Shown piece after piece: positions 264 to 62,176 of a DNA stretch of 64,000 bases. Both the position numbers and the translations under genes were made by a program. The DNA is from Octopus bimaculoides. Taxonomy: Eukaryota. The DNA is taken from the NCBI RefSeq assembly GCF_001194135.2, contig NC_068993.1:46729743-46793742 (forward strand), read 5' to 3'. Position 1 is the stretch's first letter; each line of letters starts with the position of its first letter. The notes beneath the pieces were generated by a model that saw only the letters and a program-made list of their open reading frames with translations, was not told where the DNA came from and did not search any database.

Positions 264-910
264 TATATATATATATGTTAGAGGCAATACTTGACAATTG
301 TAAGCACCTGTGTATGCCAGCTCGTGGTTGAGGTGAAAGAATGAATTGTAAATGCAAAAAATAAAAACAAAAACACAAAGGATTCTGCGGTACACGTGTT
401 TCAAGCTTTACACACATACACACATGTGTGTATGTGTCTTTGGCCCTACATTTGTCCCCCACTACTGCTTGGTAACTGGTGTTGGTTTGTTTACATCCCT
501 GTAACCTAGTGGTTCAGCAAAAAGAGAGCGATGGAATACATACAAGGCTTAAGAAAAAAGAAATGTACTGAGGTTGATTCATTTGACTAAAAGTTCTTCA
601 AGATGGTGCCCCAACATGGTTGCAGTTTATTGACAGAGACAGATAAAAGATATATTTAACTTTACTATGAAAGCAGACTCTGCTCTTTAACCACTAGGCT
701 CTCAATAAGTTGGAATGAAAATCCAACCAACTAGTGTGTTCAGTCTTCATTCAGACTTGCTGGGAGACTCACTTTTACTTTGTGGCATTACTGTACATGA
801 TAACATTTATAAACACTAAGAGATGTGTATGTATATGTGTGTATATATATATATGTATGAATTCACTTAAAGTATTAAGACAAAATTCTTTTCTTCTGCT
901 TGTGTTGCAG

Positions 911-1042
911 GTGCTCGATACGGTCGCCGTTCCACTTGGATTGGTGCCAGTGGTGATCAGACGTACATGAGAATTGATGAATCTTTGATCAATGCTCACA
1001 CACTCACTAGCTGTAACATCTTTGCCAACCAATCTTGTATTG
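911..1042 (+). CDS. MYCBP2: MYCBP2/Highwire exon (1st in window, phase 1-1)
   Basis: ttgcag| and |gtgagt; translates GARYGRRSTWIGASGDQTYMRIDESLINAH, matching my recollection of human MYCBP2 GARYGRKATWIGASGDQTFLRIDEALINSH. Confidence 0.95.
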
Positions 1043-4028: not shown

Positions 4029-4250
4029 AGGCGGCGATCTGGCAGAAACGTTAGCACGCCGGGCGAAATGCTTGGCAGTATCGTCTGCTGCTACGTTCTG
4101 GGTTCAAATTCCGCCGAGGTTGACTTTACCTTTCATCCTTTTGGGGTCAATTAAATAAGTACCAGTTATGCACTGGGGTCAATATAATCGACTTAATCCG
4201 TTTGTTTGTCCCCTCTGTGTGTAGCCCCTTGTGGGCAGTAAAGAAATAAG
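4029..4250 (+). mobile_element. tRNA-headed SINE, full length (tail type A)
   Basis: ggcggcgatctggcagaaacgttagc head, gggttcaaattcc B-box, taagtaccagtt core, ...gtgggcagtaaagaaataag tail; many copies in window. Confidence 0.85.
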
Positions 4251-5470: not shown

Positions 5471-5759
5471 AATGCATTTACAAAATATTTATACTGTATG
5501 TACAATATGGATATGTATATACAGTTTATACATTGAGTACACTATATGCGTGTGTGTATATATATATACACACACACATGCACACATATATTTAAGAGCT
5601 AAATACAACAGGTGGTTTACTCAAACTCTTTATTATAACACCATAGATTATGTAATCTTTCCACATGTTTAACTAGTGTATGTTGTATGATAATTATCAC
5701 ACAGATAATTGCTTAATTACTTACCAGTGACAGTTCTTCACAAGAAAATAGTAATTTAA

Positions 5760-5991
5760 AAGGCGGCAAGCTGTGGTGATCAGACGTACAGTGGGCGAAA
5801 TGCTTAGCAGTATTTCGTCTGCCGTTACGTTCTGAGTTCAAATTCCACCGAGGTCGACTTTGCCTTTTATCCTTTCGGGGCCGATAAATTAAGTACCAGT
5901 TACGCACTGGGATCGATGTAATCGACTTAATCCCTTTGTCTGTCCTTGTTTGTCCCCTCTATGTTTAGCCCCTTGTGGGCAATAAAGAAAT
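5760..5991 (+). mobile_element. tRNA-headed SINE (tail type A) with 18-bp TSD and a host-exon-derived patch
   Basis: TSD AAGAAAATAGTAATTTAA at 5742-5759 and 5992-6009; head altered at 5773-5791. Confidence 0.9.
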
Positions 5992-6236
5992 AAGAAAATA
6001 GTAATTTAATCCAATGCTTGTGTAGTATCCTTATAAAAGACTATCCACCACCTGACGAAGTGTTTTCTGGTTTGGAATTACTTACATTGTTAATTATAAA
6101 ATCTCATTTGTTTGCAAAACCAAAGGACAATAAGTTCTGTCATCTGGTTCTGTTTTAGTATCCTTGCAATATCTTATCAAATATGCTTTTTTTTTTGTTT
6201 TTGTTTACTGAACTTCTGACTTTGTATCTATTTTAG

Positions 6237-7743: not shown

Positions 7744-7917
7744 GTAAGTTACTCTCTCTCTCTCTATCTCTCTCTCTCTTTTCTCCATCTTGATACTTCT
7801 CTCTATGAATCTGTTTTGTTGTTACTAAAGATCTAGTTTGTTGTTGCTCCACTTCTCCAGCCTCCCTTCCACCATTGGTGGTCCTTATTAAGAACATACC
7901 TTGTTTGTCTACTGCAG

Positions 7918-8045
7918 GTCATGGAGGTGGTTGGGGTTATTCGGGCCATTCAGTTGAAGCTATTCGCTTTATGTCTGACACCGATATACTATTGGGTGGC
8001 TTTGGCTTGTTTGGAGGCCGTGGAGAATATTTTGGACGAATCAAG
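7918..8045 (+). CDS. MYCBP2: MYCBP2 exon 6, PHR1 domain start (phase 1-0)
   Basis: ctgcag| and |gtaaga; SHGGGWGYSGHSVEAIRFMSDTDILLGGFGLFGGRGEY, the hallmark PHR1 sequence. Confidence 0.97.
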
Positions 8046-8690
8046 GTAAGATTCTCTATTTTCACTTAAACTATTGCTGTTTTCCGAAGTTAAAAACTTT
8101 AGCTAACAATATGTGCATTTGTGTGTATGTCTATATATGTATGTATGTTTGTGCGAGTGCAAGTGTGAATATGTGAGACCTGTATAAAAGAGAAACCTGA
8201 CTTCTTAAACCAAGTTACTGATTTACTTACAATTTAATCCAGCTTATAGTCTTTAGCTTCTGCTACTATTCATACCCACTTCCAACTTTTATTTTCTTGC
8301 TTTTAAACACATTTTCTGGGATAGTATAGAGTTCTTGTAGTGAATAAAATTGATGTTCATTGATGTGGACCTGAACTTAACGGAACCAAATCTATGCAGT
8401 AGGGTGGATGCAGGAACGAGTAATTGCATGCTTTGTCAACCGGTCACAGATAAGGAGTGCTGTGCTAGCAGGTGCATTGTCATAGTGCAACATTCAGGTT
8501 CTATTTGTCCATGGTGCAGTCCTCTTTCTTCACATTGCCTCTTTCAAAAGGTTAAGGACATCGAACCGAAACACCTTACTGATCATCTGACCACGTGGAA
8601 CAAACTCATGACTCGGTTTCACTCAAAAGTTTTGCTTGGATTGAATAAAACATAGGTTACTGATTTATATTACTAATACTAGTTAGTTTA

Positions 8691-9783: not shown

Positions 9784-10046
9784 GTAAGTTGTTTTGTTTT
9801 CTTCCAAAGTGTTAAATTATGGTAGCACCAACGATAGATAAATATTGTTATTGATAATGTTGACTATAGGAATGAAGAATATTTATATGTGAATAAATAC
9901 TCACACACACACACACACACACAAGGCAAGCGGGCATATTGATAGATACTTAGACAGAAAGACAGGACAGTAGACATAGATATATGTTAAGCAGATTTTG
10001 TTCCCTTTGTGAAGATTAATTAATGCCTTTGTTGTTTGTTTTCCAG

Positions 10047-10181
10047 AGAAACCTATGCAATGTTATTTTATGAGCCGGTGTCTCTCCAGGCTAATATCTG
10101 GTATGTGGCTTGGGCTAGGATATCTGGACCAAGTAGTGACTGTGGATCAAGTGGGCAGGCTGTTGTCACTACAGAAGATCA
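10047..10181 (+). CDS. MYCBP2: MYCBP2 exon 8, PHR1 (phase 2-2)
   Basis: tttccag| and |gtgagt; YAMLFYEPVSLQANIWYVAWARISGPSSDCGSSGQ. Confidence 0.96.
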
Positions 10182-11229
10182 GTGAGTATTTGCATTGATT
10201 GATTGATTGATTGATTGATTAACTCCTGGTCAACTCTGATTTAGGAGACATTTAATCCCAAGCATGATCTCCACTGAATTTTTTTCCATTTTTTAATTTT
10301 GCGCAGCCAGTGATTCTAAAACCACATTTTTTTTTACTGAAAGTGTCTTAAAAAAAAAAGTCTATGGGTATAATTTGCACAATTGCCCCTCAAAAACTGG
10401 AGGTGTTGGGGCCGAATGGTTGCATGGTTTAAGTATCAAATTAGTGTTGAAGTATCTGAAGTTCAAACATATTGCTGCTGCTAAGGCACCCATTCTTGTG
10501 CTGCTGGGAAAAATACATAACTGTGCTTACCTCTGTTTGCTTGGTTGACATGAGGTTGATTCTAGTTTCCTGAAGAGTGCTTAGTTATAGAATAAATCCT
10601 CAGCTATCAGAAATAAGAGTTACAGTAATAGATTGGTAATGTGAGAAGTATGTGAAGAATTTTGGGGCAGATAGTAAGTCAATTATGGAATGAAATGATT
10701 TGGTGCAGCTGTTTGGAGACTGACAATTTGGCATGGTTAAACTGGACATTCAGCCTGTTTTGGCGACAGTACATTTTGGTGCTGGAATTCAAACACAGGT
10801 ACAGACACATGCAAAAATAAACACAGATAGACCACGAGGAGGAGAGATATTACAATTTATTAATTGAAAACATTTGAGGAAAACACTTTCCCTCTCCTCA
10901 GACACATAGAGAGGAATATGTCCAGAAACACACAGAGAGCAATGGAAACATGAAAACATAACATCTGGATATCAAATAACTCCGCATCAAATCAGTGGTG
11001 CTAAATGGCAGATGCTAAAACGTCTCAGACCTAGTCTGTTACATTGATCCCACTGCTCAACTGGTACTTATTTTATTGACTTCGTAAAGATGAAAAGTAA
11101 AGTTAAAAACTCTGTAGAATTTGCACTTAGAACATAATGAGTCTAAAGAAATAGTGCAAAGCATTTTTCAGTCTCTCTGTCTGTGTCAGTTTGATAGTAT
11201 TAATAATAATAATAATAATAATAATAACG

Positions 11230-13139: not shown

Positions 13140-13295
13140 GTCAGTGCCAGCATCAGTCGGTGCCAACGTAGGTCGGCGCCAGCGTCGGTCGGTGCCAACG
13201 TAGGTCGGCGCCAGCGTCGGTCGGCGCCAGCGTCGGTCGGCGCCAGCGTCGGTCGGCGCCAGCGTCGGTCGGCGCCAGCATCAGTCGGTGCCAAC
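13140..13295 (+). repeat. CpG-rich 16-bp minisatellite (GTCGGCGCCAGCGTCG, about 10 units)
   Basis: direct inspection. Confidence 0.9.
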
Positions 13296-13533
13296 TACAT
13301 TAGCCAATGTGTCTTTAAAAATGATAGGATGTGATTTTGGGAGATTTGGTTGCTACATTTAGCAGGTGAAGCAACCATGTAGAAGTTCTCTTGTTGACCC
13401 ATGGTGATGCTCCTTCATTGTGAGAATCACACTGTTGTTTAATCCTGGGTCGCTACTGATTGAACTGACCATGCATTAAGTCCTTTCTTAAAAAAATTGC
13501 TAGTCTTGTACATCTATCATAAATTATTATTAC

Positions 13534-14186
<653 letters not shown>

Positions 14187-17372: not shown

Positions 17373-17893
17373 GTGAGTGTTTTTGTTTGTTTATTCATTG
17401 GTTTAGCTTCTGTTTTTCCATCATGGCATCAGTTTGATGACTCCTTTGAAGCAAGACTTTATGGCTGGATGCTCTTTCTGTTGTTAACCCATACCTATTT
17501 TTCAAGCAAGGAACATTTCGTTTTTTATTGCAGAAGTCTGTGGAAGCCCAGAATGACTGGGCATAATGCCAAGAAGTAATGTCTACATCATCACCATTTT
17601 GTTCAAGCAGTGACAAACATGGACTATTAACATTTATATCTAATTGCATGCATGCAGGAACATACATGTACACATTCACACATACAAACATATGCTGTAG
17701 GCATAGCAAGAAGTTTGCTTCCCAAATACCTGGTTTCAGATCCAGTCCCACTGCATGACATCTTAGATAAGTATCTTCTTCTATAGCGCCAGACCAACCA
17801 AAGCCTTGGAATTGGATTTGGTACATGGAAGTTGAAAGAACTGTCCTACCTGTGCATGCATGGAAGATGGATGTTAAACAATGATGATGATGA

Positions 17894-17950: not shown

Positions 17951-18154
17951 CAGGGTTGGCCAAAAGTCACCTGACAAAAATTCAAAATTCCATACATACT
18001 TAATATTTAATTTTATTTATTCATTTCAATTATGAATGGTTAATAATTGGATTCTTTGCCTATTTATTGGCGAAGTCTCATATAAAATAATTTTTTTGTT
18101 TTAATCTTGCAATAATATGTTTTTCATGTATTGTCTGGTGACTTTTGGCTAACC

Positions 18155-18157
<3 letters not shown>
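17951..18157. mobile_element. Tc1/mariner-type MITE (207 bp)
   Basis: TIRs cagggttggccaaaagtcacc / ggtgacttttggctaaccctg, inserted in a TA/CA tract; TIR similar to the element at 15705-16629. Confidence 0.85.
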
Positions 18158-18229
<72 letters not shown>

Positions 18230-19109
18230 TGCACATATGCACACATATACATAAGGTACTGTGCAGTGGAACTGAACCCCAAACCATATCCTTGCAAAGA
18301 AAATTTCTTAAACAAAGAGTCATGCCTGCACCTCACAACCATGAGTGTGCCTGATGTTTAGAAAGGGTTATGGGGGAACAAATAGTGGCAATTGCTTTTG
18401 TCATTGTTACTTAGCCCCAAGTTAATCATTATCAAGCAGTTCTACAATCAAAGGCATTCTGTCCCTAGCTGGTTGTGGTACAGTAGTCAAAAATATTGAA
18501 ATTAGTGGTCACTTCGTAGATTGCTGACCATGGTGCTGAAAATGCAGTAATGTTGACCACTGTTCTCATTATAGATCTGCTTCTCTCACACCTTTATGCA
18601 GTTCTCCATAAGCATTTTCAACAGTTAGTGGTACAATGTTCTTTGGACATTGTCAAGCCATTGCAGCTGGTGATGTAAATAGAGTGCACTGGACTTGCAC
18701 ATTATTCATATATACATATGTGCACAGACTGGATGAAATGCATAGACTGTGTACCCACATAGATGTAGGCAATATAAATGCATAGACAATACACACATGC
18801 ACATACAATATAAGCATAATACATGTAAGCCTGCAATATATGCCATACATGCACATATACAGGTTATGTATGTAATACACAGTGTCACATTGATTGTATA
18901 TACACACAGCACTTGCATGCATACACACAATGCATGCATACACAATGCACACACAATACTGACATGCACAGTACACATTATACATTCACATATATCACAT
19001 CATGCTATACACAAAACTAATACAGACACATACAGACACACTCACATTCACTACATCTGTTTACTTCTTCCTTTTTCATTGTCTGTCTGTCTGTCACTTG
19101 TTTTCTCAG

Positions 19110-19662: not shown

Positions 19663-19942
19663 CCTGCATGCGTGGTGTGTGATATGGTGGTGTCTGACTC
19701 AAGTAAGCCTCATCAAGCAACGTCATTTCAAATGTGACCACCCAACCGTGTCCAGGGCATGGTGCACTTAGTACCTCATTATTTAATGACAGTAGGATGT
19801 GAGTTTTTTTTTGCTGCTATTTTTAGCAGTGATTAGCACAGAGCTATAGGCAAAAACATCGCCTATAGCCATGCCTGTGTGTATGATACTCGTATATAAA
19901 ACAAGGAATGGAATGTAAATGTAATATTTTTATCTTTGGCAG

Positions 19943-20155
19943 CTCGATCTGGCCAGTACTTCTAGGCCTTTGTTGGTCACTCCTAACCGTTTCACTCGAA
20001 CCATCCATGGAGCATACTGGAACACAGGCAATGGAAGTCCTGATGCTGTGGCGTTCAGTGTTGACAGGCCAGGCATCCTAATTGCTGGCGTCTACGTCTA
20101 TGGAGGAAGTGTAGTTGGAGGCCAGTACGAATACGAGTTGGAGCTCTTGGATGAT
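19943..20155 (+). CDS. MYCBP2: MYCBP2 exon 14, PHR2 start (phase 0-0)
   Basis: ttggcag| and |gtaagt; NRFTRTIHGAYWNTGNGSPDAVAFSVDRPGI. Confidence 0.96.
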
Positions 20156-20670
20156 GTAAGTTCATTTCTTTTGCATATTTGTTGTTGTTTAACCCTAGGC
20201 CAGCTCTGGTTGAGTAGACTTATGTTATTTAGATACATGGTCATATAACTGTTTGAATGAAGTAAGTTTAACTGCTATTTCTTGCTAACATTGCAAACAC
20301 ATAGAGGCTTCTTCAATGTTATGTTCTTGTTTAGCCCAAGATTGGTTCTGATAGAGTAGCTTACCATCGGAGTTCATACCAACTTTGATTATAACATCTT
20401 TTCTTCTGGCATAGTATATCTTAGACAACAGTAGCCAGTGTATCTCTTGTTTATTTACCCAGACAGTAGGACATGGTAAGAGAAAAATTGGCTGCTATTT
20501 TTAACAGTTTGGGCTACCCTGGAAAGGCTTCATCTTCATTGAGCTATTCCTGTAGTCATTGTTTGGAATGGTAGCACCAAATTAGATTGCTGACATTTAG
20601 TACTGAGTTGATGATATCAACTAACCACCTTCCCTGCAAAGTTGCTGAACTTGTGCTAAACTTCGAACAA

Positions 20671-25966: not shown

Positions 25967-26720
25967 TTTCCCTCTCCTCTCACTCTTTCCCTCTCCTCTC
26001 ACTCTTTCCCTCTCCTCTCACTCTTTCCCTCTCCTCTCACTCTTTCCCTCTCCTCTCACTCTTTCCCTCTCCTCTCACTCTTTCCCTCTCCTCTCACTCN
26101 NNNNNNNNNNNNNNNNNNNNNNNNNNNNNNNNNNNNNNNNNNNNNNNNNNNNNNNNNNNNNNNNNNNNNNNNNNNNNNNNNNNNNNNNNNNNNNNNNNNN
26201 NNNNNNNNNNNNNNNNNNNNNNNNNNNNNNNNNNNNNNNNNNNNNNNNNNNNNNNNNNNNNNNNNNNNNNNNNNNNNNNNNNNNNNNNNNNNNNNNNNNN
26301 NNNNNNNNNNNNNNNNNNNNNNNNNNNNNNNNNNNNNNNNNNNNNNNNNNNNNNNNNNNNNNNNNNNNNNNNNNNNNNNNNNNNNNNNNNNNNNNNNNNN
26401 NNNNNNNNNNNNNNNNNNNNNNNNNNNNNNNNNNNNNNNNNNNNNNNNNNNNNNNNNNNNNNNNNNNNNNNNNNNNNNNNNNNNNNNNNNNNNNNNNNNN
26501 NNNNNNNNNNNNNNNNNNNNNNNNNNNNNNNNNNNNNNNNNNNNNNNNNNNNNNNNNNNNNNNNNNNNNNNNNNNNNNNNNNNNNNNNNNNNNNNNNNNN
26601 NNNNNNNNNNNNTCTCTCTCTGTTGCTCTCTCTCTGTTGCTCTCTCTCTGTTGCTCTCTCTCTGTTGCTCTCTCTCTGTTGCTCTCTCTCTGTTGCTCTC
26701 TCTCTGTTGCTCTCTCTCTG
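25967..26720 (+). repeat. pyrimidine-rich minisatellites (19-bp CTCTTTCCCTCTCCTCTCA and 14-bp CTCTCTCTCTGTTG) flanking a 512-N gap
   Basis: direct inspection; gap 26100-26611. Confidence 0.85.
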
Positions 26721-31470: not shown

Positions 31471-31510
<40 letters not shown>

Positions 31511-31700
31511 GTATGTATGAGTATGATATCTACAAAGTTCCACTCAGAAACAATTGTTCACTCTGAGGCTACAGTTGAAGACTGTTACCTTAAGTGTGCT
31601 ATCAGTGATATGAAACCCAGAAGCCCATTAGTTGCAAAACAAAACTTCTTAACCGCACAGTTATGCATGGTGATTCACTTAGATATCTTTATTGTTTCAG

Positions 31701-34065: not shown

Positions 34066-34281
34066 TTCTTTTCTACTCTAGGCACAAGGCCCAAAATTTT
34101 TGGGGAGGGGGCTAGTCGATTAAATCAACCTCAGTACACAACTGGTACTTAATTTATCGACCCCGAAAGGATAGAAAGCAAAATAGACCTCAGTGGAATT
34201 TGAACTCAGAATGTAAAGACAGATGAAATACCGCTAAGCATTTCGCCCGGCGTGCTAACATTTCTGCCAGCTCGCAGCCTT
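34066..34281 (-). mobile_element. tRNA-headed SINE (tail type C), reverse
   Basis: gcatttcgcccggcgtgctaacatttctgccagctcgc head end; tail on minus strand ...gggccttgtgcctagagtagaaaag. Confidence 0.8.
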
Positions 34282-35009: not shown

Positions 35010-35560
35010 CTATCTCTCTCTCTGCCTCCTCCTCTTTCTCTCTGCCTCCTCCTCTTTCTCTCTGCCTCCTCCTCTTTCTCTCTGCCTCCTCCTCTTTCTC
35101 TCTGTCTCCTCTTCTTTCTCTCTGCCTCCTCCTCTCTCTGTGCCTCCTCCTCTTTCTCTNNNNNNNNNNNNNNNNNNNNNNNNNNNNNNNNNNNNNNNNN
35201 NNNNNNNNNNNNNNNNNNNNNNNNNNNNNNNNNNNNNNNNNNNNNNNNNNNNNNNNNNNNNNNNNNNNNNNNNNNNNNNNNNNNNNNNNNNNNNNNNNNN
35301 NNNNNNNNNNNNNNNNNNNNNNNNTCTCTGCCTCCTCCTCTTTCTCTCTGCCTCCTCCTCTTTCTCTCTGCCTCCTCCTCTTTCTCTCTGCCTCCTCCTC
35401 TTTCTCTCTGCCTCCTCCTCTTTCTCTCTGCCTCCTCCTCTCTCTCTCTGCCTCCTCCTCTCTCTCTCTGCCTCTTCCTCTCTCTCTGTGCCTCTTCCTC
35501 TCTCTCTCTGCCTCTTCCTCTCTCTCTCTGCCTCCTCTCTCTCTGCCTCCTCTCTCTGTG
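35010..35560 (+). repeat. 21-bp pyrimidine minisatellite (TCTCTCTGCCTCCTCCTCTTT) with gap 35160-35324
   Basis: direct inspection. Confidence 0.88.
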
Positions 35561-38915: not shown

Positions 38916-39076
38916 GTAGTACCAGAGCTGTGTGATCTCTCAATGTAGAAAAGTAGTGACTCGACCTGGAGAGACTCCTAGATCCCTGACCTCCCCACCC
39001 TGTTGAATAACGTTACTCTACACACTTTTTTTGGAAAACCCCATCTATCATTAATTTTTCTCTGTTTCTGTTTCAG

Positions 39077-39248
39077 GTTTATGAAAACTATTCATTTGAG
39101 GAGTTGCGTTATGCTGCCCCGGCTGTGCCACGCCCCAGTGAGAACATGCTAGTTCGTTCTAGCAATGATGGCTCCTACAACTGTAACTGGACCCCAGGCA
39201 GTGTTGGCTTTTACAACATCTATGTTACTGTTGATGGCTTCGATGCAG
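39077..39248 (+). CDS. MYCBP2: MYCBP2 exon 27, filamin-like region (phase 0-1)
   Basis: gtttcag| and |gtacga; VYENYSFEELRYA...RPSENMLVR...NDGSYNCNWTPGSVG. Confidence 0.96.
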
Positions 39249-39504
39249 GTACGACCAGAACCCTCACCACCCCCACCATCTCTTCTCTTACTCTTTTACT
39301 TGTTTTAGTCATTTGACTGTAGCCATGCTGGAGTACCACCTTGAAAAATTTCAGTTGAACAAATTGACCCCAGGACTTACTCGTTGTAAACTTAGTACTT
39401 ATATCTATCAGTCTCTTTTGTTGAACTGCTAAATTACAAGGACATAAACAGACCAGCATCAGTTGTCATACTCATACACAAATATAAATAAATATATAGC
39501 CTGA

Positions 39505-39698
39505 ACAGGATAAACTACCCCTATTTTGCAGAAAAAAGTGTAGGTGGTTAGCTATGAGACTCGAACTCACACCTCCGCGATTACGCTTCGCGGTGATCTG
39601 ACCGATTGAGCTTAACTCCACCACTTTAGTGGGGGAGTTCGAGTCTCATAGCTAACCACCTACACTTTTTTCTGCAAAATAGGGGTAGTTTATCCTGT
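39505..39698. repeat. perfect 64-bp inverted repeat around a 66-bp spacer
   Basis: 39505-39568 is the exact reverse complement of 39635-39698. Confidence 0.92.
39543..39622 (-). other. tRNA-like unit followed by a T6 Pol III terminator
   Basis: minus strand GGTGG...AGCTCAATCGGTCAGA, CCGCGA-agcgtaa-TCGCGG arm, GTGAG-TTCGAGT-CTCAT T-arm, ...CCACC then tacactttttt. Confidence 0.55.
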
Positions 39699-39798: not shown

Positions 39799-39833
<35 letters not shown>

Positions 39834-40074
39834 TGCACGCACAAACATACATGATGGGCTTCTTTCAGTTTCCATCTACCAGATCCACTCACTATTCTCT
39901 AACCTCAAATATTTATCTTTGCATCATCTGTTTGTATACCAACCCGTGAGCTCCTATTTTATTTATAATCCTCAGTTTGATATATACTTGCCCTGTCCAT
40001 CACTGACCTACCAGTTCTTACAATAATTTTGTATGTTTCTTTAACCATAATCTTTTGTTTCTGGAAACTTGCAG

Positions 40075-42068: not shown

Positions 42069-42173
42069 CTGCTTCAGCAGTACATATACTAAAATTGGAA
42101 CAATACAGAGAAGATTAGTGTGGGCCCTGGGCAAAGATGACATGCAAATTTGTGTAACATTCTATATTTTTTT
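42069..42173 (+). pseudogene. U6 snRNA retro-pseudogene, nearly full length
   Basis: ctgcttcagcagtacatatactaaaattggaacaatacagagaagattagtgtgggccctgggcaaagatgacatgcaaatttgtgtaacattctatattttt aligns end to end with canonical U6; ACAGAGA box intact, AGC triad changed to AGT. Confidence 0.9.
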
Positions 42174-42181
42174 AAATAGAT

Positions 42182-42338
42182 GCAGGCGTGGCTGTGTGGT
42201 AGAAGGCTTGCTTCCCAACCACATGGTTTCGGGTTCAGTCCCACTGCATGGCATGTTGGGTCAGTGTCTTCAACTATAGCCTCAGGCTGACCAAAGCCTT
42301 GTAAGTGGATTTGGTAGATGGAAACTGAAATAAGCCTG

Positions 42339-42378
<40 letters not shown>

Positions 42379-44652: not shown

Positions 44653-44866
44653 TGCTTTGACAAGCTGCCTTGACAAGCTGCCTTGACAAGCTGCTTTGAC
44701 AAGCTGCTTTGACAAGCTGCTTTGACAAGCTGCTTTGACAAGCTGCTTTGACAAGCTGCCTTGACAAGCNNNNNNNNNNTGACAAGCTGCCTTGACAAGC
44801 TGCTTTGACAAGCTGCCTTGACAAGCTGCTTTGACAAGCTGCCTTGACAAGCTGCTTTGACAAGCT
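44653..44866 (+). repeat. 13-bp minisatellite TTGACAAGCTGCY (about 16 units, 10-N gap inside)
   Basis: direct inspection. Confidence 0.92.
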
Positions 44867-49568: not shown

Positions 49569-51198
49569 TGTATGTATGTGTGGTAAATCTTATCTGTACA
49601 GCTGGATGTATGACAGGTCTTAGTGAGTTTAGAGTTTCATCAAGAATATCATCATCACTCACAAGCTTATGTCATTCGTTCCCTACATATGTTTCGCCAT
49701 TGTAGTTGTTTGCATCCTCTGCAGTGGATGTTCCAAGTGCAACTGGATGCTGAACCACAACAGTTTATCAGGGGAATGCTTTCAATGACAAGTGAAATGA
49801 AATGTTCCTTACTTGAAACACAGACAAGGGTTAGCAGTGGGAAGAGCATCTGGCTGTAAAGACAATGCTTTCATGAAATGTATTCTTCTAACCCATGCTG
49901 GCATGGAAAGCAAATTTAAAGTGAATGAAAATACTATTAGTTTTGGATAGTTTGTTCTATTTATTAATTTTACCGTATAGTATTTATATATCATATGATA
50001 TTCTTTGGTCTGAAATTTGGTTGTGGAAGCATCTGTTTTCTTTCTGATTAGATAGTAAAAAAAAAAAAAAAAAAATTTTGGTTTGTAATTTATTAGAAAT
50101 CAGTTTTTCTTTGTTTCTTAGTTTTGCTTTGCCATTTTTGGGGTGGTGCTTACATTGCAAGAGAATGGCTATATTGTTTGCTATCCGTCTATCTCTTGTC
50201 TATGATAAGAATGGTACCTGATTGGCATTGGCTTATCTTTCTGATAACTGCATGTTTTTGTCTCTTTCTTCTGTTCATCTGTCTGTCTCTGAAATGCACA
50301 CACACACACATGCAGTGCCTTGAAAAAATGCATTCACTGCATTCTGTAAAATTTTTAGTGTTAAGAAGAGCAAGCATACAAACAGAGAAATCATGCTAAA
50401 ACTACAAAACTTGGTCTTCACATCTATCTAGGAAGACAGTAAATTGACATGAGAACTGACCTGCACTGCGATGACCTGTCCAACTCATGCCAGCATGAGA
50501 AGCCTATATAAAGTGAAGGTTATATCATCATTATCATTTAATGTTTGTCCCCCACCCACCCCAGCTGGCTGCTCAACAGTACCCAACAAGTCAGAGAACT
50601 GTGTTCTGTGTTGCTTGCTTTGTTATGGTTGCTGTGGCTGGATGCCCAGCCCAGCACACACACACACACACACACACTTTTAATTCATTTTGATTGCAAA
50701 GCATTACTGTATTTTCCAGCATACAAATCAATGTAGAATATAGTGTGAACATGTAAACATTCGAACACTGTCACTAACTTTTCAAATTCCACCTTTTTTC
50801 TCATGAAATATTTGGTTTGCCAAAGTCATCTTAGTGTCTTGGTTGACCTACCTTTTTTTTTTCTTTTTTTTAAATTTTGGTCTGAAAATCTTGGCTTGTA
50901 TGCCAAAACAAAAAAACAAAAACAAAAATACAGTGTTTGTGCATGTATCCATGTGTGTGACTACATAAATCCATATCATGATATATCACTACCCCTGTCT
51001 TTACTCACATCATCAGAAGTGTTCTTACATGCCAAACACCTCATGTGAAAACATGTGATATCATTCTGACAAATGTTTTCCTCAACTGATTTCTGGGTCA
51101 TTTCTGCCTGCCAGGACCCCCACAACTGCTGAACACAGCTTCCTAATTATCAACTTCATAACCCCNNNNNNNNNNNNNNNNNNNNNNNNNNCCCCCTC

Positions 51199-54082: not shown

Positions 54083-54240
54083 NNNNNNNNNNNNNNNNNN
54101 NNNNNNNNNNNNNNNNNNNNNNNNNNNNNNNNNNNNNNNNNNNNNNNNNNNNNNNNNNNNNNNNNNNNNNNNNNNNNNNNNNNNNNNNNNNNNNNNNNNN
54201 NNNNNNNNNNNNNNNNNNNNNNNNNNNNTATACACACACA

Positions 54241-59834: not shown

Positions 59835-60282
59835 TAATGTTTGTTGTTTTTGTGTGTGTGTATATGTATGTTTTATTTTGCATTTTTCAAGTTGTTTTTA
59901 ACGTTGTCTCTCTTTTAGCTAATTACAATTTATAATATTCATAATTTTATTCCTTATTTCAATATTCTGTATTTGAATGTAATTTTGTTTTCTGAATTTT
60001 ATTGTAGAAATTTATTTTCAAAGGTGTTGAAATCTCAGTTGCTTACACAACATTGAGTGCATGGTTTTTTCAGTAATAGTTCTTGGTAGGATACCTTCCA
60101 GAGGAAACGCTCACATACATGTACACTCTCACTTGCATGCACACACAATAACAGGGTAGACATTCTCTATGAGGTGTGTATAGCTTTGTTTATAATTTTA
60201 AGGCCATACACACATTCTTAATCGTGCAAACATTTATGTTTATATATGTTTGTATTTATATATGTGTGCATATGTGTATGTA

Positions 60283-60328
<46 letters not shown>

Positions 60329-62176
60329 CACACACACATATGCACGTGTGTGTTTGTATGTTTATGTGTATGTATGTATGTGTGTGTCTGTATTATCATT
60401 CAACACCCATTGTCCATGCTGGCATGGGTTAGACGGTTTGACCAGAGCTAGCAAGTTGGGGAGCTGCACCAGACTCCAGTCTGATTTGGTATGGTTTCTA
60501 TGGCTAGATGCCCTTCCTAATGCCAACCCTCTTACACAGTGTGCTTGGTGCTTTTATGTAGCACTGCACAGGTGTCTTTATGTGGCTCTGCATGGGCACT
60601 TTTACATGGCACTGACATGAGTGCTTTTCACCACCAGAGGGACTGGTCTGAACACTTCTGTTGTGTGTGTGTGTGTGTATGCGTGAAGTAAATGAATCTC
60701 TGCTAGTTTTAAGAATAAGTAATCTAGTATATTCGCTCAGCTGATCTCCCTATTCATTTAATTGTAGTGTAAGTGGCTGAGTATTTCACTGACACTTGTA
60801 CCATTAACCTAATCCTCAGCCAGAACCATCATGAGGCACTGTGACAAGGCTGGCCCTTTAAAATAATAGTCCATTCGACAGGCTTCCACTGTTTCTCTTC
60901 TACTCAATTTCGTTGAGAAGCCTTGTGTTGGTTGATCTGATCTAAGAAGGTACTTGCTCAAGATGCCATACTGTGGGATGGAACTCCAAGACTTAACAGG
61001 TGTGAAGTGAACTTCTTGAACATTTGGTCATGCCTGTTTCTACTTTGGCTTTATGGATGTCTGGGAGACATTGGCTAAAAACTGTACAATATAGACAAAG
61101 ACTATCAAGTAAAGAGTGGTATCTTTGAGTTAAAATCAAATGATGCTGCTTTGAAGTGTCCATTCTGTAAGTGGGGCCCAAGTGCAGCACTTGCAGGATC
61201 CCAGCAGGGATTGAATTGTAGTGTGTTTGTGTGGACAATTTCTTCTCTCAAGGGCTTGGTTTGTCAGTCTTCTAAAGTCACGTGAGCCAGGGAGAAATCA
61301 AGCTGCTTGTGAGATGGTTCTCCTGTAATGTGAACCATGGTACATTTGTACTGTAAAGAGAAATAAGCATCACATCTGTGAATGTTCCTGCAGAAAGGAA
61401 GCTGGACTGAAAAGCTACTTGTTTGCACATGATCATGCACCATTCAACGGAGCGATGGCACTCATCTGACAAGAAGATGCAATCAGCATATATGTATATA
61501 TACATAATATATATTTATCATTCTTAGACAGAATGTTGTGGACAGTTTTGCCCAGCTAAGCCATCATTGGACTGCTGGCCAAAACTTCAAAGTCACTGTT
61601 AACATTCTTGTCCAAGAATAATAAATTTCTACTCTACAAAAGTATAGAGTAACCCAGATTAACGTAAAATTGTTCTCATCCTAACTGAACATAAGAGCAA
61701 ATGTTGAGATATCTCAACATTTACTATATTATTTAATATATAATGTAGTAAATGTTGATGCAAAACAAAATTAGATGGGAAAATACTAGGGGAGTGCATT
61801 AACATACCTTATAAAATTCCTTTCAAAAATAGAAGATTATGGAAGTCACACTCATACATTGCCAAAATCAAAATGCAAACACATACATTTCCTTCAGTTG
61901 TAACTTGCCTGAAGACTCTGTGCACTTGCAGGCAAAATTCAGACTAGCAAAAGACTGACTTGACCAATATATATATATATATATATATATANNNNNNNNN
62001 NNNNNNNNNNNNNNNNNNNNNNNNNNNNNNNNNNNNNNNNNNNNNNNNNNNNNNNNNNNNNNNNNNNNNNNNNNNNNNNNNNNNNNNNNNNNNNNNNNNN
62101 NNNNNNNNNNNNNNNNNNNNNNNNNNNNNNNNNNNNNNNNNNNNNNNNNNNNNNNNNNNNNNNNNNNNNNNNNNNN

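What the first reader, a model, noticed from the sequence alone, without database searches (positions are those of the whole stretch)
5773..5791. SINE whose A-box region is replaced by an exact 18-nt copy of a host-gene exon 4.8 kb upstream
Seen: the SINE at 5760-5991 has an 18-bp TSD and otherwise matches its sister copy at 4029. It reads ggcggcaagctg-TGGTGATCAGACGTACAGT-gggcgaaatg where the sister reads ggcggcgatctg-GCAGAAACGTTAGCACGCC-gggcgaaatg, a 19-for-19 nt swap with no indel. GTGGTGATCAGACGTACA (5773-5790) is identical to coding exon positions 950-967 (codons for S-G-D-Q-T-Y, conserved with human MYCBP2), so the exon is the donor. My estimate for a given 18-mer matching somewhere in this window on either strand is about 2e-6 under a uniform base model. 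Inference: templated repair or gene conversion from nearby DNA or from the pre-mRNA/cDNA, or template switching during SINE reverse transcription. The patch removes the Pol III A-box region, so it may silence this copy. An assembly chimera is also possible.
Basis: partly seen in the sequence, partly recalled or inferred. Interest (0 to 1): 0.75.

Follow-up and report, generated by a model that had tools for sequence, protein, structure and literature searches.

The report
Exon-copied 18-base patch in SINE
One young SINE copy in an intron of an octopus-like MYCBP2/Highwire gene has had about 19 bases of its head overwritten by an exact 18-base copy of the coding exon 4.8 kb upstream; this is a real but single scar of template-switch DNA repair, a known kind of event.

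Summary
GTGGTGATCAGACGTACA occurs exactly twice in the window, at exon position 950-967 and SINE position 5773-5790, on the same strand. The SINE (5760-5991) has a perfect 18-bp target-site duplication. All 14 other copies in the window carry the family head sequence; only this copy carries the block, in register and without an indel. Twelve of 18 positions differ from the family (12% elsewhere; P about 8e-8), and 11 of those 12 equal the exon base. The exon encodes a conserved GASGDQTY motif of a PHR-domain (MYCBP2/Highwire-type) gene, so the exon is the donor. There is no flanking homology, so this is not classical gene conversion. Junction overlaps are 1 nt or less, so an assembly chimera is unlikely.

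My best reading is a homology-independent, template-switch repair patch, a deletion plus templated filler of the Pol theta / MMBIR / ectopic-capture class. The donor lies in cis but unusually far away (4.8 kb) and in direct orientation. I cannot decide from one locus whether the template was DNA or the gene's own transcript. The claim of A-box loss is inconclusive. No cephalopod data were available, so reads, other individuals and genome-wide frequency remain untested. It is a real curiosity of moderate interest.

The parts
911..1042 (+). Donor coding exon of a PHR-family (MYCBP2/Highwire/RPM-1-like) gene. It is bounded by ...ttgcag| and |gtgagt and encodes (G)ARYGRRSTWIGASGDQTYMRIDESLINAHTLTSCNIFANQSCI(G).
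   Evidence: Homologous exon ORFs from other animals keep GASGDQT[FY]. PHR domains lie downstream on the same strand.
950..967 (+). Donor 18-mer GTGGTGATCAGACGTACA, covering codons (A)GT GGT GAT CAG ACG TAC A(TG).
5742..5759 (+). Left target-site duplication, AAGAAAATAGTAATTTAA.
   Evidence: also recovered as an 18-nt orphan match.
5760..5991 (+). Recipient SINE copy. It is full length, in sense orientation in the intron after the donor exon, and belongs to a young CpG-rich subfamily (13 CpG, against 1-4 in most other copies).
5773..5790 (+). Exon-identical patch. G5773 is shared with the SINE (1-nt junction overlap), and 5774-5790 is the 17 nt that must have been copied. Eight positions (5774-5778, 5783-5785) are private to this copy and all equal the exon.
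5791..5792 (+). Two bases (GT) at the 3' junction. G5791 matches neither the exon (T) nor the SINE (C). T5792 matches a common SINE variant (7 of 14 copies) but not the young sister (C). They are read as a non-templated addition or a later substitution.
5793..5822 (+). Conserved SINE hairpin (GGGCGAAATGC-TTAGCA-GTATTTCGTC...) whose foot abuts the 3' end of the patch.
5992..6009 (+). Right target-site duplication, AAGAAAATAGTAATTTAA.
4029..4250 (+). Closest unpatched relative in the window ('sister' copy). It shares the 3' tail subfamily and reads GCAGAAACGTTAGCACGCC where the patch lies.

Best explanation
The patch is the scar of a homology-independent, template-switch repair event in cis.

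Shown: a full-length young SINE lies in sense orientation in the intron downstream of exon 911-1042. Nineteen nucleotides of its head (5774-5792) are replaced, and 17-18 of the new bases are an exact same-strand copy of exon positions 950-967. One or two bases at the 3' junction come from neither source.

Inferred: a break or a stalled fork arose in the SINE head, next to its conserved hairpin, and removed or unwound about 19 nt. A free 3' end (...AAGCTG) primed on the exon DNA 4.8 kb upstream with 1 nt or less of microhomology. The DNA could have been the same chromatid looped back or the sister chromatid. The end was extended by about 17 nt, dissociated, picked up 1-2 stray nucleotides and was rejoined to the other side.

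This makes it a deletion plus templated filler (delins) of the class made by polymerase-theta end joining, microhomology-mediated template switching, MMBIR or ectopic sequence capture. The equal length (19 for 19) is taken as coincidence. The event most likely followed the SINE's insertion, but the timing is not resolved. I attribute no function to it. At most it disables a retrotransposition-relevant head in a copy that was already an intronic passenger.
For: The exact 18-mer is unique to these two sites. It is the only unexplained exact match of 18 nt or more in 64 kb. The block is private to one of 15 copies and in register. Mismatches are strongly clustered, 12 of 18 against 19 of 158 (P = 8e-8), and 11 of the 12 equal the exon base. 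Donor direction is fixed by protein-level conservation of the exon motif and by the gene's identity.

There is no donor-recipient homology, which excludes homologous conversion and fits homology-independent capture. The junction anatomy is a 1-nt overlap at the 5' side and 1-2 unassigned bases at the 3' side. That matches what is described for Pol theta templated inserts (single-nucleotide homology; PMC4490562) and for ectopic sequence capture with N-additions by microhomology-mediated template switching without donor-recipient homology (PMC5087911). 'Insertions with replacement' are also reported for MMBIR-type events (PMC8421209).

Cis proximity and a single simple event are supported by the absence of any other match of 11 nt or more between the two neighbourhoods.
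Against: Templates of Pol theta and MMBIR fillers are usually reported within tens to about 100 bp of the break, and often inverted. Here the donor is 4.8 kb away and direct. The microhomology is minimal: 1 nt at one junction and none at the other.

Same-sense orientation, and a donor that is transcribed with the recipient, fit an RNA template equally well. The length-neutral swap is not predicted by the model. No reads, no second individual and no other species could be examined; the public collections available here hold no cephalopod DNA. The event therefore rests on one assembled sequence.
Confidence: 0.5

Rival explanations
1. The template was RNA, namely the gene's own transcript. There are two versions. 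In (a), a break in the intronic SINE was patched by reverse transcription of a locus-tethered MYCBP2-like transcript, as in class-2 templated-sequence insertion or transcript-templated DSB repair. In (b), the LINE reverse transcriptase copying the SINE RNA during target-primed reverse transcription stalled at the head hairpin, jumped to a nascent host transcript for 18 nt, and jumped back to finish the last 13 nt of the SINE.
For: The patch has the sense orientation of the host gene, which an RNA template requires and a DNA template gives only half the time. The donor is exonic and is co-transcribed with the recipient. RNA-derived patches at breaks, and transcript-templated repair, are documented (PMC5110952; PMC12065846). 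The 3' end of the patch sits at the foot of a stable hairpin, a plausible stalling site for a reverse transcriptase. Reverse-transcriptase template switching to other RNAs is well known for LINEs (papers listed).
Against: The 18-mer lies inside one exon and crosses no splice junction, so nothing marks it as RNA-derived. Version (b) needs two jumps with return to the same template, whereas known LINE chimeras have one junction. Documented transcript-templated repair uses homology to the break site, and there is none here. The exon-ness of the donor gives no net support. A spliced transcript would offer many exons, and the use of the nearest one points to linear proximity, which DNA explains equally well (inference).
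Confidence: 0.3
2. The patch is an assembly or library artefact and does not exist in the animal's genome.
For: The window is a scaffolded assembly with six runs of N. Young high-copy SINEs are hard to assemble. No reads could be inspected.
Against: A chimeric join needs a shared k-mer at each junction. Here the overlaps are 1 nt at the 5' side and 0 nt at the 3' side, far below any assembler's word size. The patch is flanked on both sides by correct SINE sequence and a perfect TSD. There is no N run near it; the nearest is at 26100.
Confidence: 0.07
3. The 19-nt block is a trait of a SINE subfamily found elsewhere in the genome, and its identity with the nearby exon is chance.
For: Only 15 copies of a family that must have very many copies could be examined, and only one other member of the young subfamily.
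Against: The probability that a given 18-mer recurs in 64 kb is about 1e-6 (composition). No other orphan match of that length exists in the window. The head is conserved across all subfamilies seen.
Confidence: 0.03
4. It is ordinary homology-dependent interlocus gene conversion from the exon to the SINE.
For: It is a same-strand, length-neutral, in-register replacement.
Against: No flanking similarity exists: 0.20 and 0.23 identity in the 40-nt flanks, and BLAST returns only the 18-mer. In-register identity between the exon and the original block is 6-7 of 18, which is chance level.
Confidence: 0.02

Closest known systems
Polymerase theta-mediated end joining with templated inserts (delins); PMC4490562
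   Same: Both combine a small deletion with an insert that is an exact copy of other genomic sequence, single-nucleotide homology at a junction, and heritable scars seen in natural genomes.
   Different: [quoted passage not shown] Here the only template in 64 kb is 4.8 kb away. Dependence on Pol theta cannot be tested.
[quoted passage not shown]
   Same: Both lack homology between donor and recipient, couple the capture to a deletion, have unidentified (N) nucleotides at the borders, and involve kilobase-scale distances.
   Different: Those events were induced by two nuclease cuts 3.2 kb apart in cultured human cells, and long inserts (45 bp or more) were the focus. This is a spontaneous 17-18-nt patch in an animal genome.
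MMBIR-type templated insertions, including 'insertions with replacement'; PMC8421209
   Same: Both are short templated tracts of 10 bp or more that replace the original sequence and are attributed to a polymerase template switch.
   Different: The operational signature there is an inverted template within 100 bp with microhomology at both junctions. Here the template is direct and 4.8 kb away, and microhomology is 1 nt or less.
Class-2 templated sequence insertion polymorphisms and transcript-templated DSB repair; PMC5110952, PMC12065846
   Same: Both are patches copied from a transcribed sequence and placed at a break with end-joining features.
   Different: TSIP donors are distant or unlinked and are shown to be RNA-derived. 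RT-DSBR uses homology to the break. Neither an RNA origin nor homology is shown here, and the donor is in cis.
Short-range template-switch mutations (four-point model); PMC5453318, PMC9435742
   Same: Both produce a cluster of apparent substitutions explained by one templated event.
   Different: That model yields reverse-complement copies of sequence a few to tens of bases away. This copy is direct and 4.8 kb away.
LINE reverse-transcriptase template-switch chimeras such as U6/L1 (papers listed)
   Same: Both involve a retroposon with foreign RNA-like sequence and a TSD around the whole insertion.
   Different: Known chimeras have one junction, with foreign RNA at the 5' end. Here the SINE sequence resumes 5' of the patch, giving two junctions.

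Membership tests
Pol theta (TMEJ) templated insert / delins | Loss of original bases together with an insert identical to other genomic sequence | tested here: met
   Nineteen nt are replaced, and 17-18 of the new bases are identical to 950-967.
Pol theta (TMEJ) templated insert / delins | Template in close proximity to the break (tens of bp) | tested here: not met
   The only other occurrence in the window is 4.8 kb upstream, even allowing 3 mismatches.
Pol theta (TMEJ) templated insert / delins | At least 1 nt of homology at junctions | tested here: inconclusive
   The 5' junction shares G5773. The 3' junction has 1-2 unassigned bases, so homology cannot be read.
Pol theta (TMEJ) templated insert / delins | Dependence on POLQ | not testable with these tools
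   This needs genetics.
MMBIR templated insertion (MMBSearch signature) | Inverted template within 100 bp, with microhomology at both junctions | tested here: not met
   The orientation is direct, the distance is 4823 bp, and microhomology is 1 nt or less. The definition is taken from PMC8421209.
Short-range template switch (four-point model) | Reverse-complement copy of nearby sequence | tested here: not met
   The copy is direct. The best inverted intra-SINE candidate (5824-5835) covers only 10 nt and needs two indels.
Homology-dependent interlocus gene conversion | Sequence homology flanking the converted tract | tested here: not met
   Flank identity is 0.20 and 0.23. BLAST returns the 18-mer only. 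No other match of 11 nt or more exists.
Class-2 TSIP / RNA-templated patch | Donor sequence is RNA-derived (for example spliced, or sense-only) | tested here: inconclusive
   The orientation is sense, but the patch lies inside one exon and crosses no splice junction.
LINE-RT template-switch chimera | A single junction with foreign RNA at the 5' end, and a TSD around the whole insertion | tested here: not met
   A TSD is present, but 13 nt of SINE 5' end precede the patch, so there are two junctions.
tRNA-derived SINE (possibly OR1-like CORE-SINE) | Short multicopy element with TSDs | tested here: met
   There are 15 copies in 64 kb, with TSDs of 18 nt (c5760) and 15 nt (c9156).
tRNA-derived SINE (possibly OR1-like CORE-SINE) | tRNA-like head with A and B boxes | tested here: inconclusive
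   ARAGORN and the Rfam tRNA model find nothing in any copy. Only weak motif matches exist: A-box-like 7 of 9 at three places in the consensus, and B-box-like 7 of 9 in c4029. The CORE-SINE assignment is a lead from memory and from PMC4824008 and was not tested.
MYCBP2 / Highwire / RPM-1 (PHR protein) gene | Two tandem PHR domains | tested here: met
   Pfam PF08005 hits lie at 7809-8066 plus 10024-10182 (first domain, split by an intron) and at 19925-20245 (second domain), all above the curated cut-off.
MYCBP2 / Highwire / RPM-1 (PHR protein) gene | Filamin-type repeat, RCC1-like domain and C-terminal RING | tested here: inconclusive
   The filamin hit at 39011-39313 scores 21.2 bits, below the 26.9 cut-off. 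The donor exon gave no Pfam or PDB hit. The C-terminus is outside the window.

The most novel reading that the evidence does not exclude
The template was the host gene's own transcript. The patch would then be a natural, heritable footprint of RNA-templated repair in an animal genome, or of a double template switch by a LINE reverse transcriptase onto a nascent host transcript. The donor would have been chosen by co-transcriptional proximity and not by homology.
Probability: 0.3. Interest if true: 0.6.

Novelty: new member of a known kind. Interest (0 to 1): 0.35.

Why it matters
Clusters of substitutions in repeats are usually read as point mutations or subfamily markers. This locus shows that a block of 12 apparent substitutions can be one templated event copied from kilobases away. 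Current detection tools, which search within about 100 bp and for inverted templates, would miss such an event.

If events like this are common in SINE-rich cephalopod genomes, they would inflate divergence-based ages of repeat copies. They would also give a way to ask, genome-wide, whether germline repair uses DNA or transcripts as filler templates, by looking at donor strand, exon-exon junctions and distance decay. As a single case with no sign of function, it is an instructive curiosity and not a discovery.

Tried and rejected
1. External validation. An exact look-up of the patch-spanning ORF 5713-5907(-) found no record. A protein search with the SINE translation found no candidates. A metagenome scan for the patch/SINE junction found 0 hits. 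A power-control scan for the SINE head found one hit, which turned out to be a chance match in unrelated DNA. The collections available hold no cephalopod SINE DNA, so these nulls carry no weight for or against a subfamily trait.

2. Pre-existing homology guiding an in-register swap. The majority consensus matches the exon at 7 of 18 positions (up to 10 of 18 if common variants are counted), but the young sister copy matches at only 6 of 18, which is chance level. Rejected.

3. The patch as a structure-selected sequence. In c5760 the patch pairs with 5824-5835 and extends the hairpin (RNA z = -3.7). However, 3-7% of random 19-mers do as well, and the original block gives the same energy. Rejected as coincidence.

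4. An inverted intra-SINE template (quasi-palindrome correction). It covers only 10 nt and needs two indels, against 18 of 18 for the exon. Rejected.

5. A conserved, structured head. The RNAalifold consensus is weak (-5.5 kcal/mol) with no compensatory pairs. Uninformative.

6. tRNA identity of the head. ARAGORN and Rfam were negative.

7. U6 plus SINE at 42069-42340 as an RT template-switch chimera. No TSD of 9 nt or more brackets the pair, and the SINE starts near its own 5' end. This is more simply a SINE inserted at the U6 T-run. Not pursued.

8. A solved-structure search with the exon peptide gave no hit.

Full report
**What is there.** The window carries part of a large plus-strand gene. 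Pfam finds two PHR domains. The first is split between 7809-8066 and 10024-10182, and the second starts in 19925-20245. There is also a sub-threshold filamin repeat at 39011-39313. That is the architecture of the MYCBP2/Highwire/RPM-1 E3 ligases.

The exon at 911-1042 is bounded by ttgcag| and |gtgagt. It encodes ARYGRRSTWIGASGDQTYMRIDESLINAHTLTSCNIFANQSCI. A search of 5.8 billion proteins returned only six exon-sized ORFs from other animals. They are 73-75% identical and all keep GASGDQT[FY].

About 4.8 kb downstream, in the following intron and in sense orientation, lies a 232-bp SINE (5760-5991). It is flanked by a perfect 18-bp target-site duplication (5742-5759 and 5992-6009).

**Checking the observation.** GTGGTGATCAGACGTACA occurs at 950-967 and 5773-5790, both on the plus strand, and nowhere else in the window even with three mismatches. 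Dinucleotide shuffles expect 0.03 matches. The bases flanking the identity differ on both sides, so it is exactly 18 nt.

BLAST finds about 15 copies of the SINE family in the window. In a multiple alignment, every other copy reads close to ...GCTGGCAGAATCGTTAGCACGC(C/T)GGGC... Only c5760 reads ...GCTGTGGTGATCAGACGTACAGTGGGC..., with no gap.

Column by column, 12 of 18 positions in 5774-5791 differ from the family majority, against 19 of 158 (12%) in the rest of the element (binomial 8e-8). Eleven of the 12 equal the exon base. Eight of them (5774-5778 and 5783-5785) are seen in at most one other copy.

A census of all maximal exact matches of 14 nt or more found no other unexplained match of 18 nt or more. 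The others are SINE fragments, this TSD, a palindrome and tandem repeats.

Some details need correcting:
- The 'sister' copy at 4029 is only 83-84% identical.
- The exon ends at 1042.
- The last two bases of the 19-nt block do not come from the exon. G5791 matches neither source. T5792 is a common SINE variant.

**Direction and nature of the event.** The exon sequence encodes a motif conserved across animals, and the SINE head is conserved across all 14 other copies. The exon is therefore the donor and the SINE is the recipient.

There is no similarity around the 18-mer. Identity in the 40-nt flanks is 0.20 and 0.23. BLAST returns the 18-mer alone. No other match of 11 nt or more links the two neighbourhoods in either orientation. 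Homology-dependent gene conversion is thus excluded, and the event was a single step.

I tested whether the original SINE block already resembled the exon in register, which could explain the length-neutral swap. The majority consensus matches at 7 of 18 positions, but the young sister matches at only 6 of 18, which is chance level. I therefore treat the 19-for-19 length as coincidence.

**Age.** c5760 and c4029 retain 13 and 12 CpGs, against 1-4 in most other copies (8 in c34280), and the TSD is perfect. This is a young insertion from a young subfamily. The intact 18 of 18 identity of the patch is therefore uninformative about whether the patch arose at or after insertion.

**Is it an artefact?** The assembly is scaffolded, with six N runs, and I could not look at reads. 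But an assembly chimera requires a shared word at each junction. Here the overlaps are 1 nt (G5773) and 0 nt, and both sides of the patch continue as correct SINE sequence inside a perfect TSD. I put an artefact at about 7%.

**Mechanism.** The anatomy has five features:
- loss of about 19 nt;
- a 17-18-nt exact copy of non-homologous sequence;
- a 1-nt overlap at one junction;
- one or two unassigned bases at the other junction;
- a donor in cis.

This is the anatomy of a deletion with a templated filler. Polymerase-theta end joining makes such scars in germ lines, using single-nucleotide homology (PMC4490562). Capture of ectopic chromosomal sequence without donor-recipient homology, with N-additions at the borders, has been attributed to microhomology-mediated template switching at kilobase scale (PMC5087911). 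MMBIR-type 'insertions with replacement' have also been described, but the detection tool looks only for inverted templates within 100 bp, and its authors note that more distant templates are unsurveyed (PMC8421209).

My best explanation is a break or stalled fork in the SINE head, priming on the exon DNA 4.8 kb upstream, extension by about 17 nt, and rejoining (confidence 0.5). The 3' end of the patch sits at the foot of a conserved SINE hairpin (5793-5822). That hairpin is a plausible stalling or breakage site, but this is inference only.

**The main rival.** The template may have been the gene's own transcript (0.3). The sense orientation is required by that model and is only a 1-in-2 outcome for DNA. 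Both RNA-derived patches and transcript-templated repair are documented (PMC5110952; PMC12065846).

The donor being exonic does not help to decide. A spliced transcript would offer many exons, and use of the nearest one points to linear proximity, which DNA explains equally well. The version in which the LINE reverse transcriptase switched templates during SINE insertion needs two jumps with return to the same RNA, unlike known single-junction chimeras. I rate that version lowest within this rival.

**The A-box claim.** Neither ARAGORN nor Rfam recognises a tRNA in any SINE copy, even in a narrow permissive search. The consensus head has three equally weak A-box-like matches (7 of 9), two of them in the replaced block. 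The patch happens to introduce AGTGG.

The replaced block is the most conserved part of the head, with many columns identical in 12-13 of 14 copies. Loss of promoter or recognition function is therefore plausible but not shown. The family consensus fold is weak and has no compensatory changes.

**A lead that failed.** In c5760 the patch pairs with 5824-5835 and the stray GT extends the inner hairpin (RNA -30 kcal/mol, z = -3.7). However, 3-7% of random 19-mers placed there fold as well or better, and the original block gives -29.4 or -28.8 kcal/mol. This is coincidence.

**Limits.** No cephalopod DNA is present in the searchable collections. The exact ORF look-up, the protein search and two metagenome scans gave nothing relevant. 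I therefore could not test read support, other individuals, other species or the genome-wide frequency of the variant.

**Verdict.** This is a real, statistically secure, single templated repair patch from an exon into an intronic SINE. It is a new example of a known class, unusual in donor distance (4.8 kb) and direct orientation, with the DNA-versus-RNA template question open. Interest is moderate (0.35). Its main value is as a seed for a genome-wide survey.

Noticed in passing
window 42069-42340: A full-length U6 snRNA match (42069-42171, plus strand, 81 bits against a gathering score of 44) lies inside an intron of the PHR gene. Its T-run is followed within about 10 nt by a copy of a second SINE family that ends in (TA)n. 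No TSD of 9 nt or more brackets the pair, so I cannot say whether the U6 is a gene or a retropseudogene.
   Followed up: partly
window 17715-17848(+), 31473-31582(-), 39805-39892(-), 42183-~42340(+): A second SINE family, whose head reads GGCGTGGCTGTGTGGTAGAAGGCTTGCTTCCCAACC...GGTTTCGGGTTCAGTCCCACTGC, has several copies in the window, usually next to (TA)n.
   Followed up: no
window 13146-13293: A 16-nt tandem repeat (consensus GCCAGCGTCGGTCGGC, 9.2 copies, 87% matches) lies in an intron.
   Followed up: no
window 13523-13975: Two SINE copies (c13567, c13977) are separated by a long (ATT)n microsatellite of about 70 units at 13767-13975. A shorter (ATT)14 precedes the first copy.
   Followed up: no
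window 61699-61722: A perfect 24-nt palindrome, AAATGTTGAGATATCTCAACATTT.
   Followed up: no
window 39550-39617 (-): A weak tRNA-like match (25 bits, below the gathering score of 29), possibly the head of another tRNA-derived repeat.
   Followed up: no
window, many sites (e.g. 60258-60409, 202-272, 18153-18253): Dozens of Rfam 'mir-297/466/3149/1277' matches are all below gathering score and lie on (TG)n/(TA)n simple repeats. They are false positives, not microRNA genes.
   Followed up: yes
window 26100-26612, 35160-35324, 44770-44779, 51166-51191, 54083-54228, 61992-62176: Six runs of N show the window comes from a scaffolded assembly with unclosed gaps.
   Followed up: no
window 564-579 vs 34123-34138: A 16-nt match links a truncated SINE fragment near 560-590 to copy c34280. 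It is an unannotated SINE remnant just upstream of the donor exon, not a second templated patch.
   Followed up: yes
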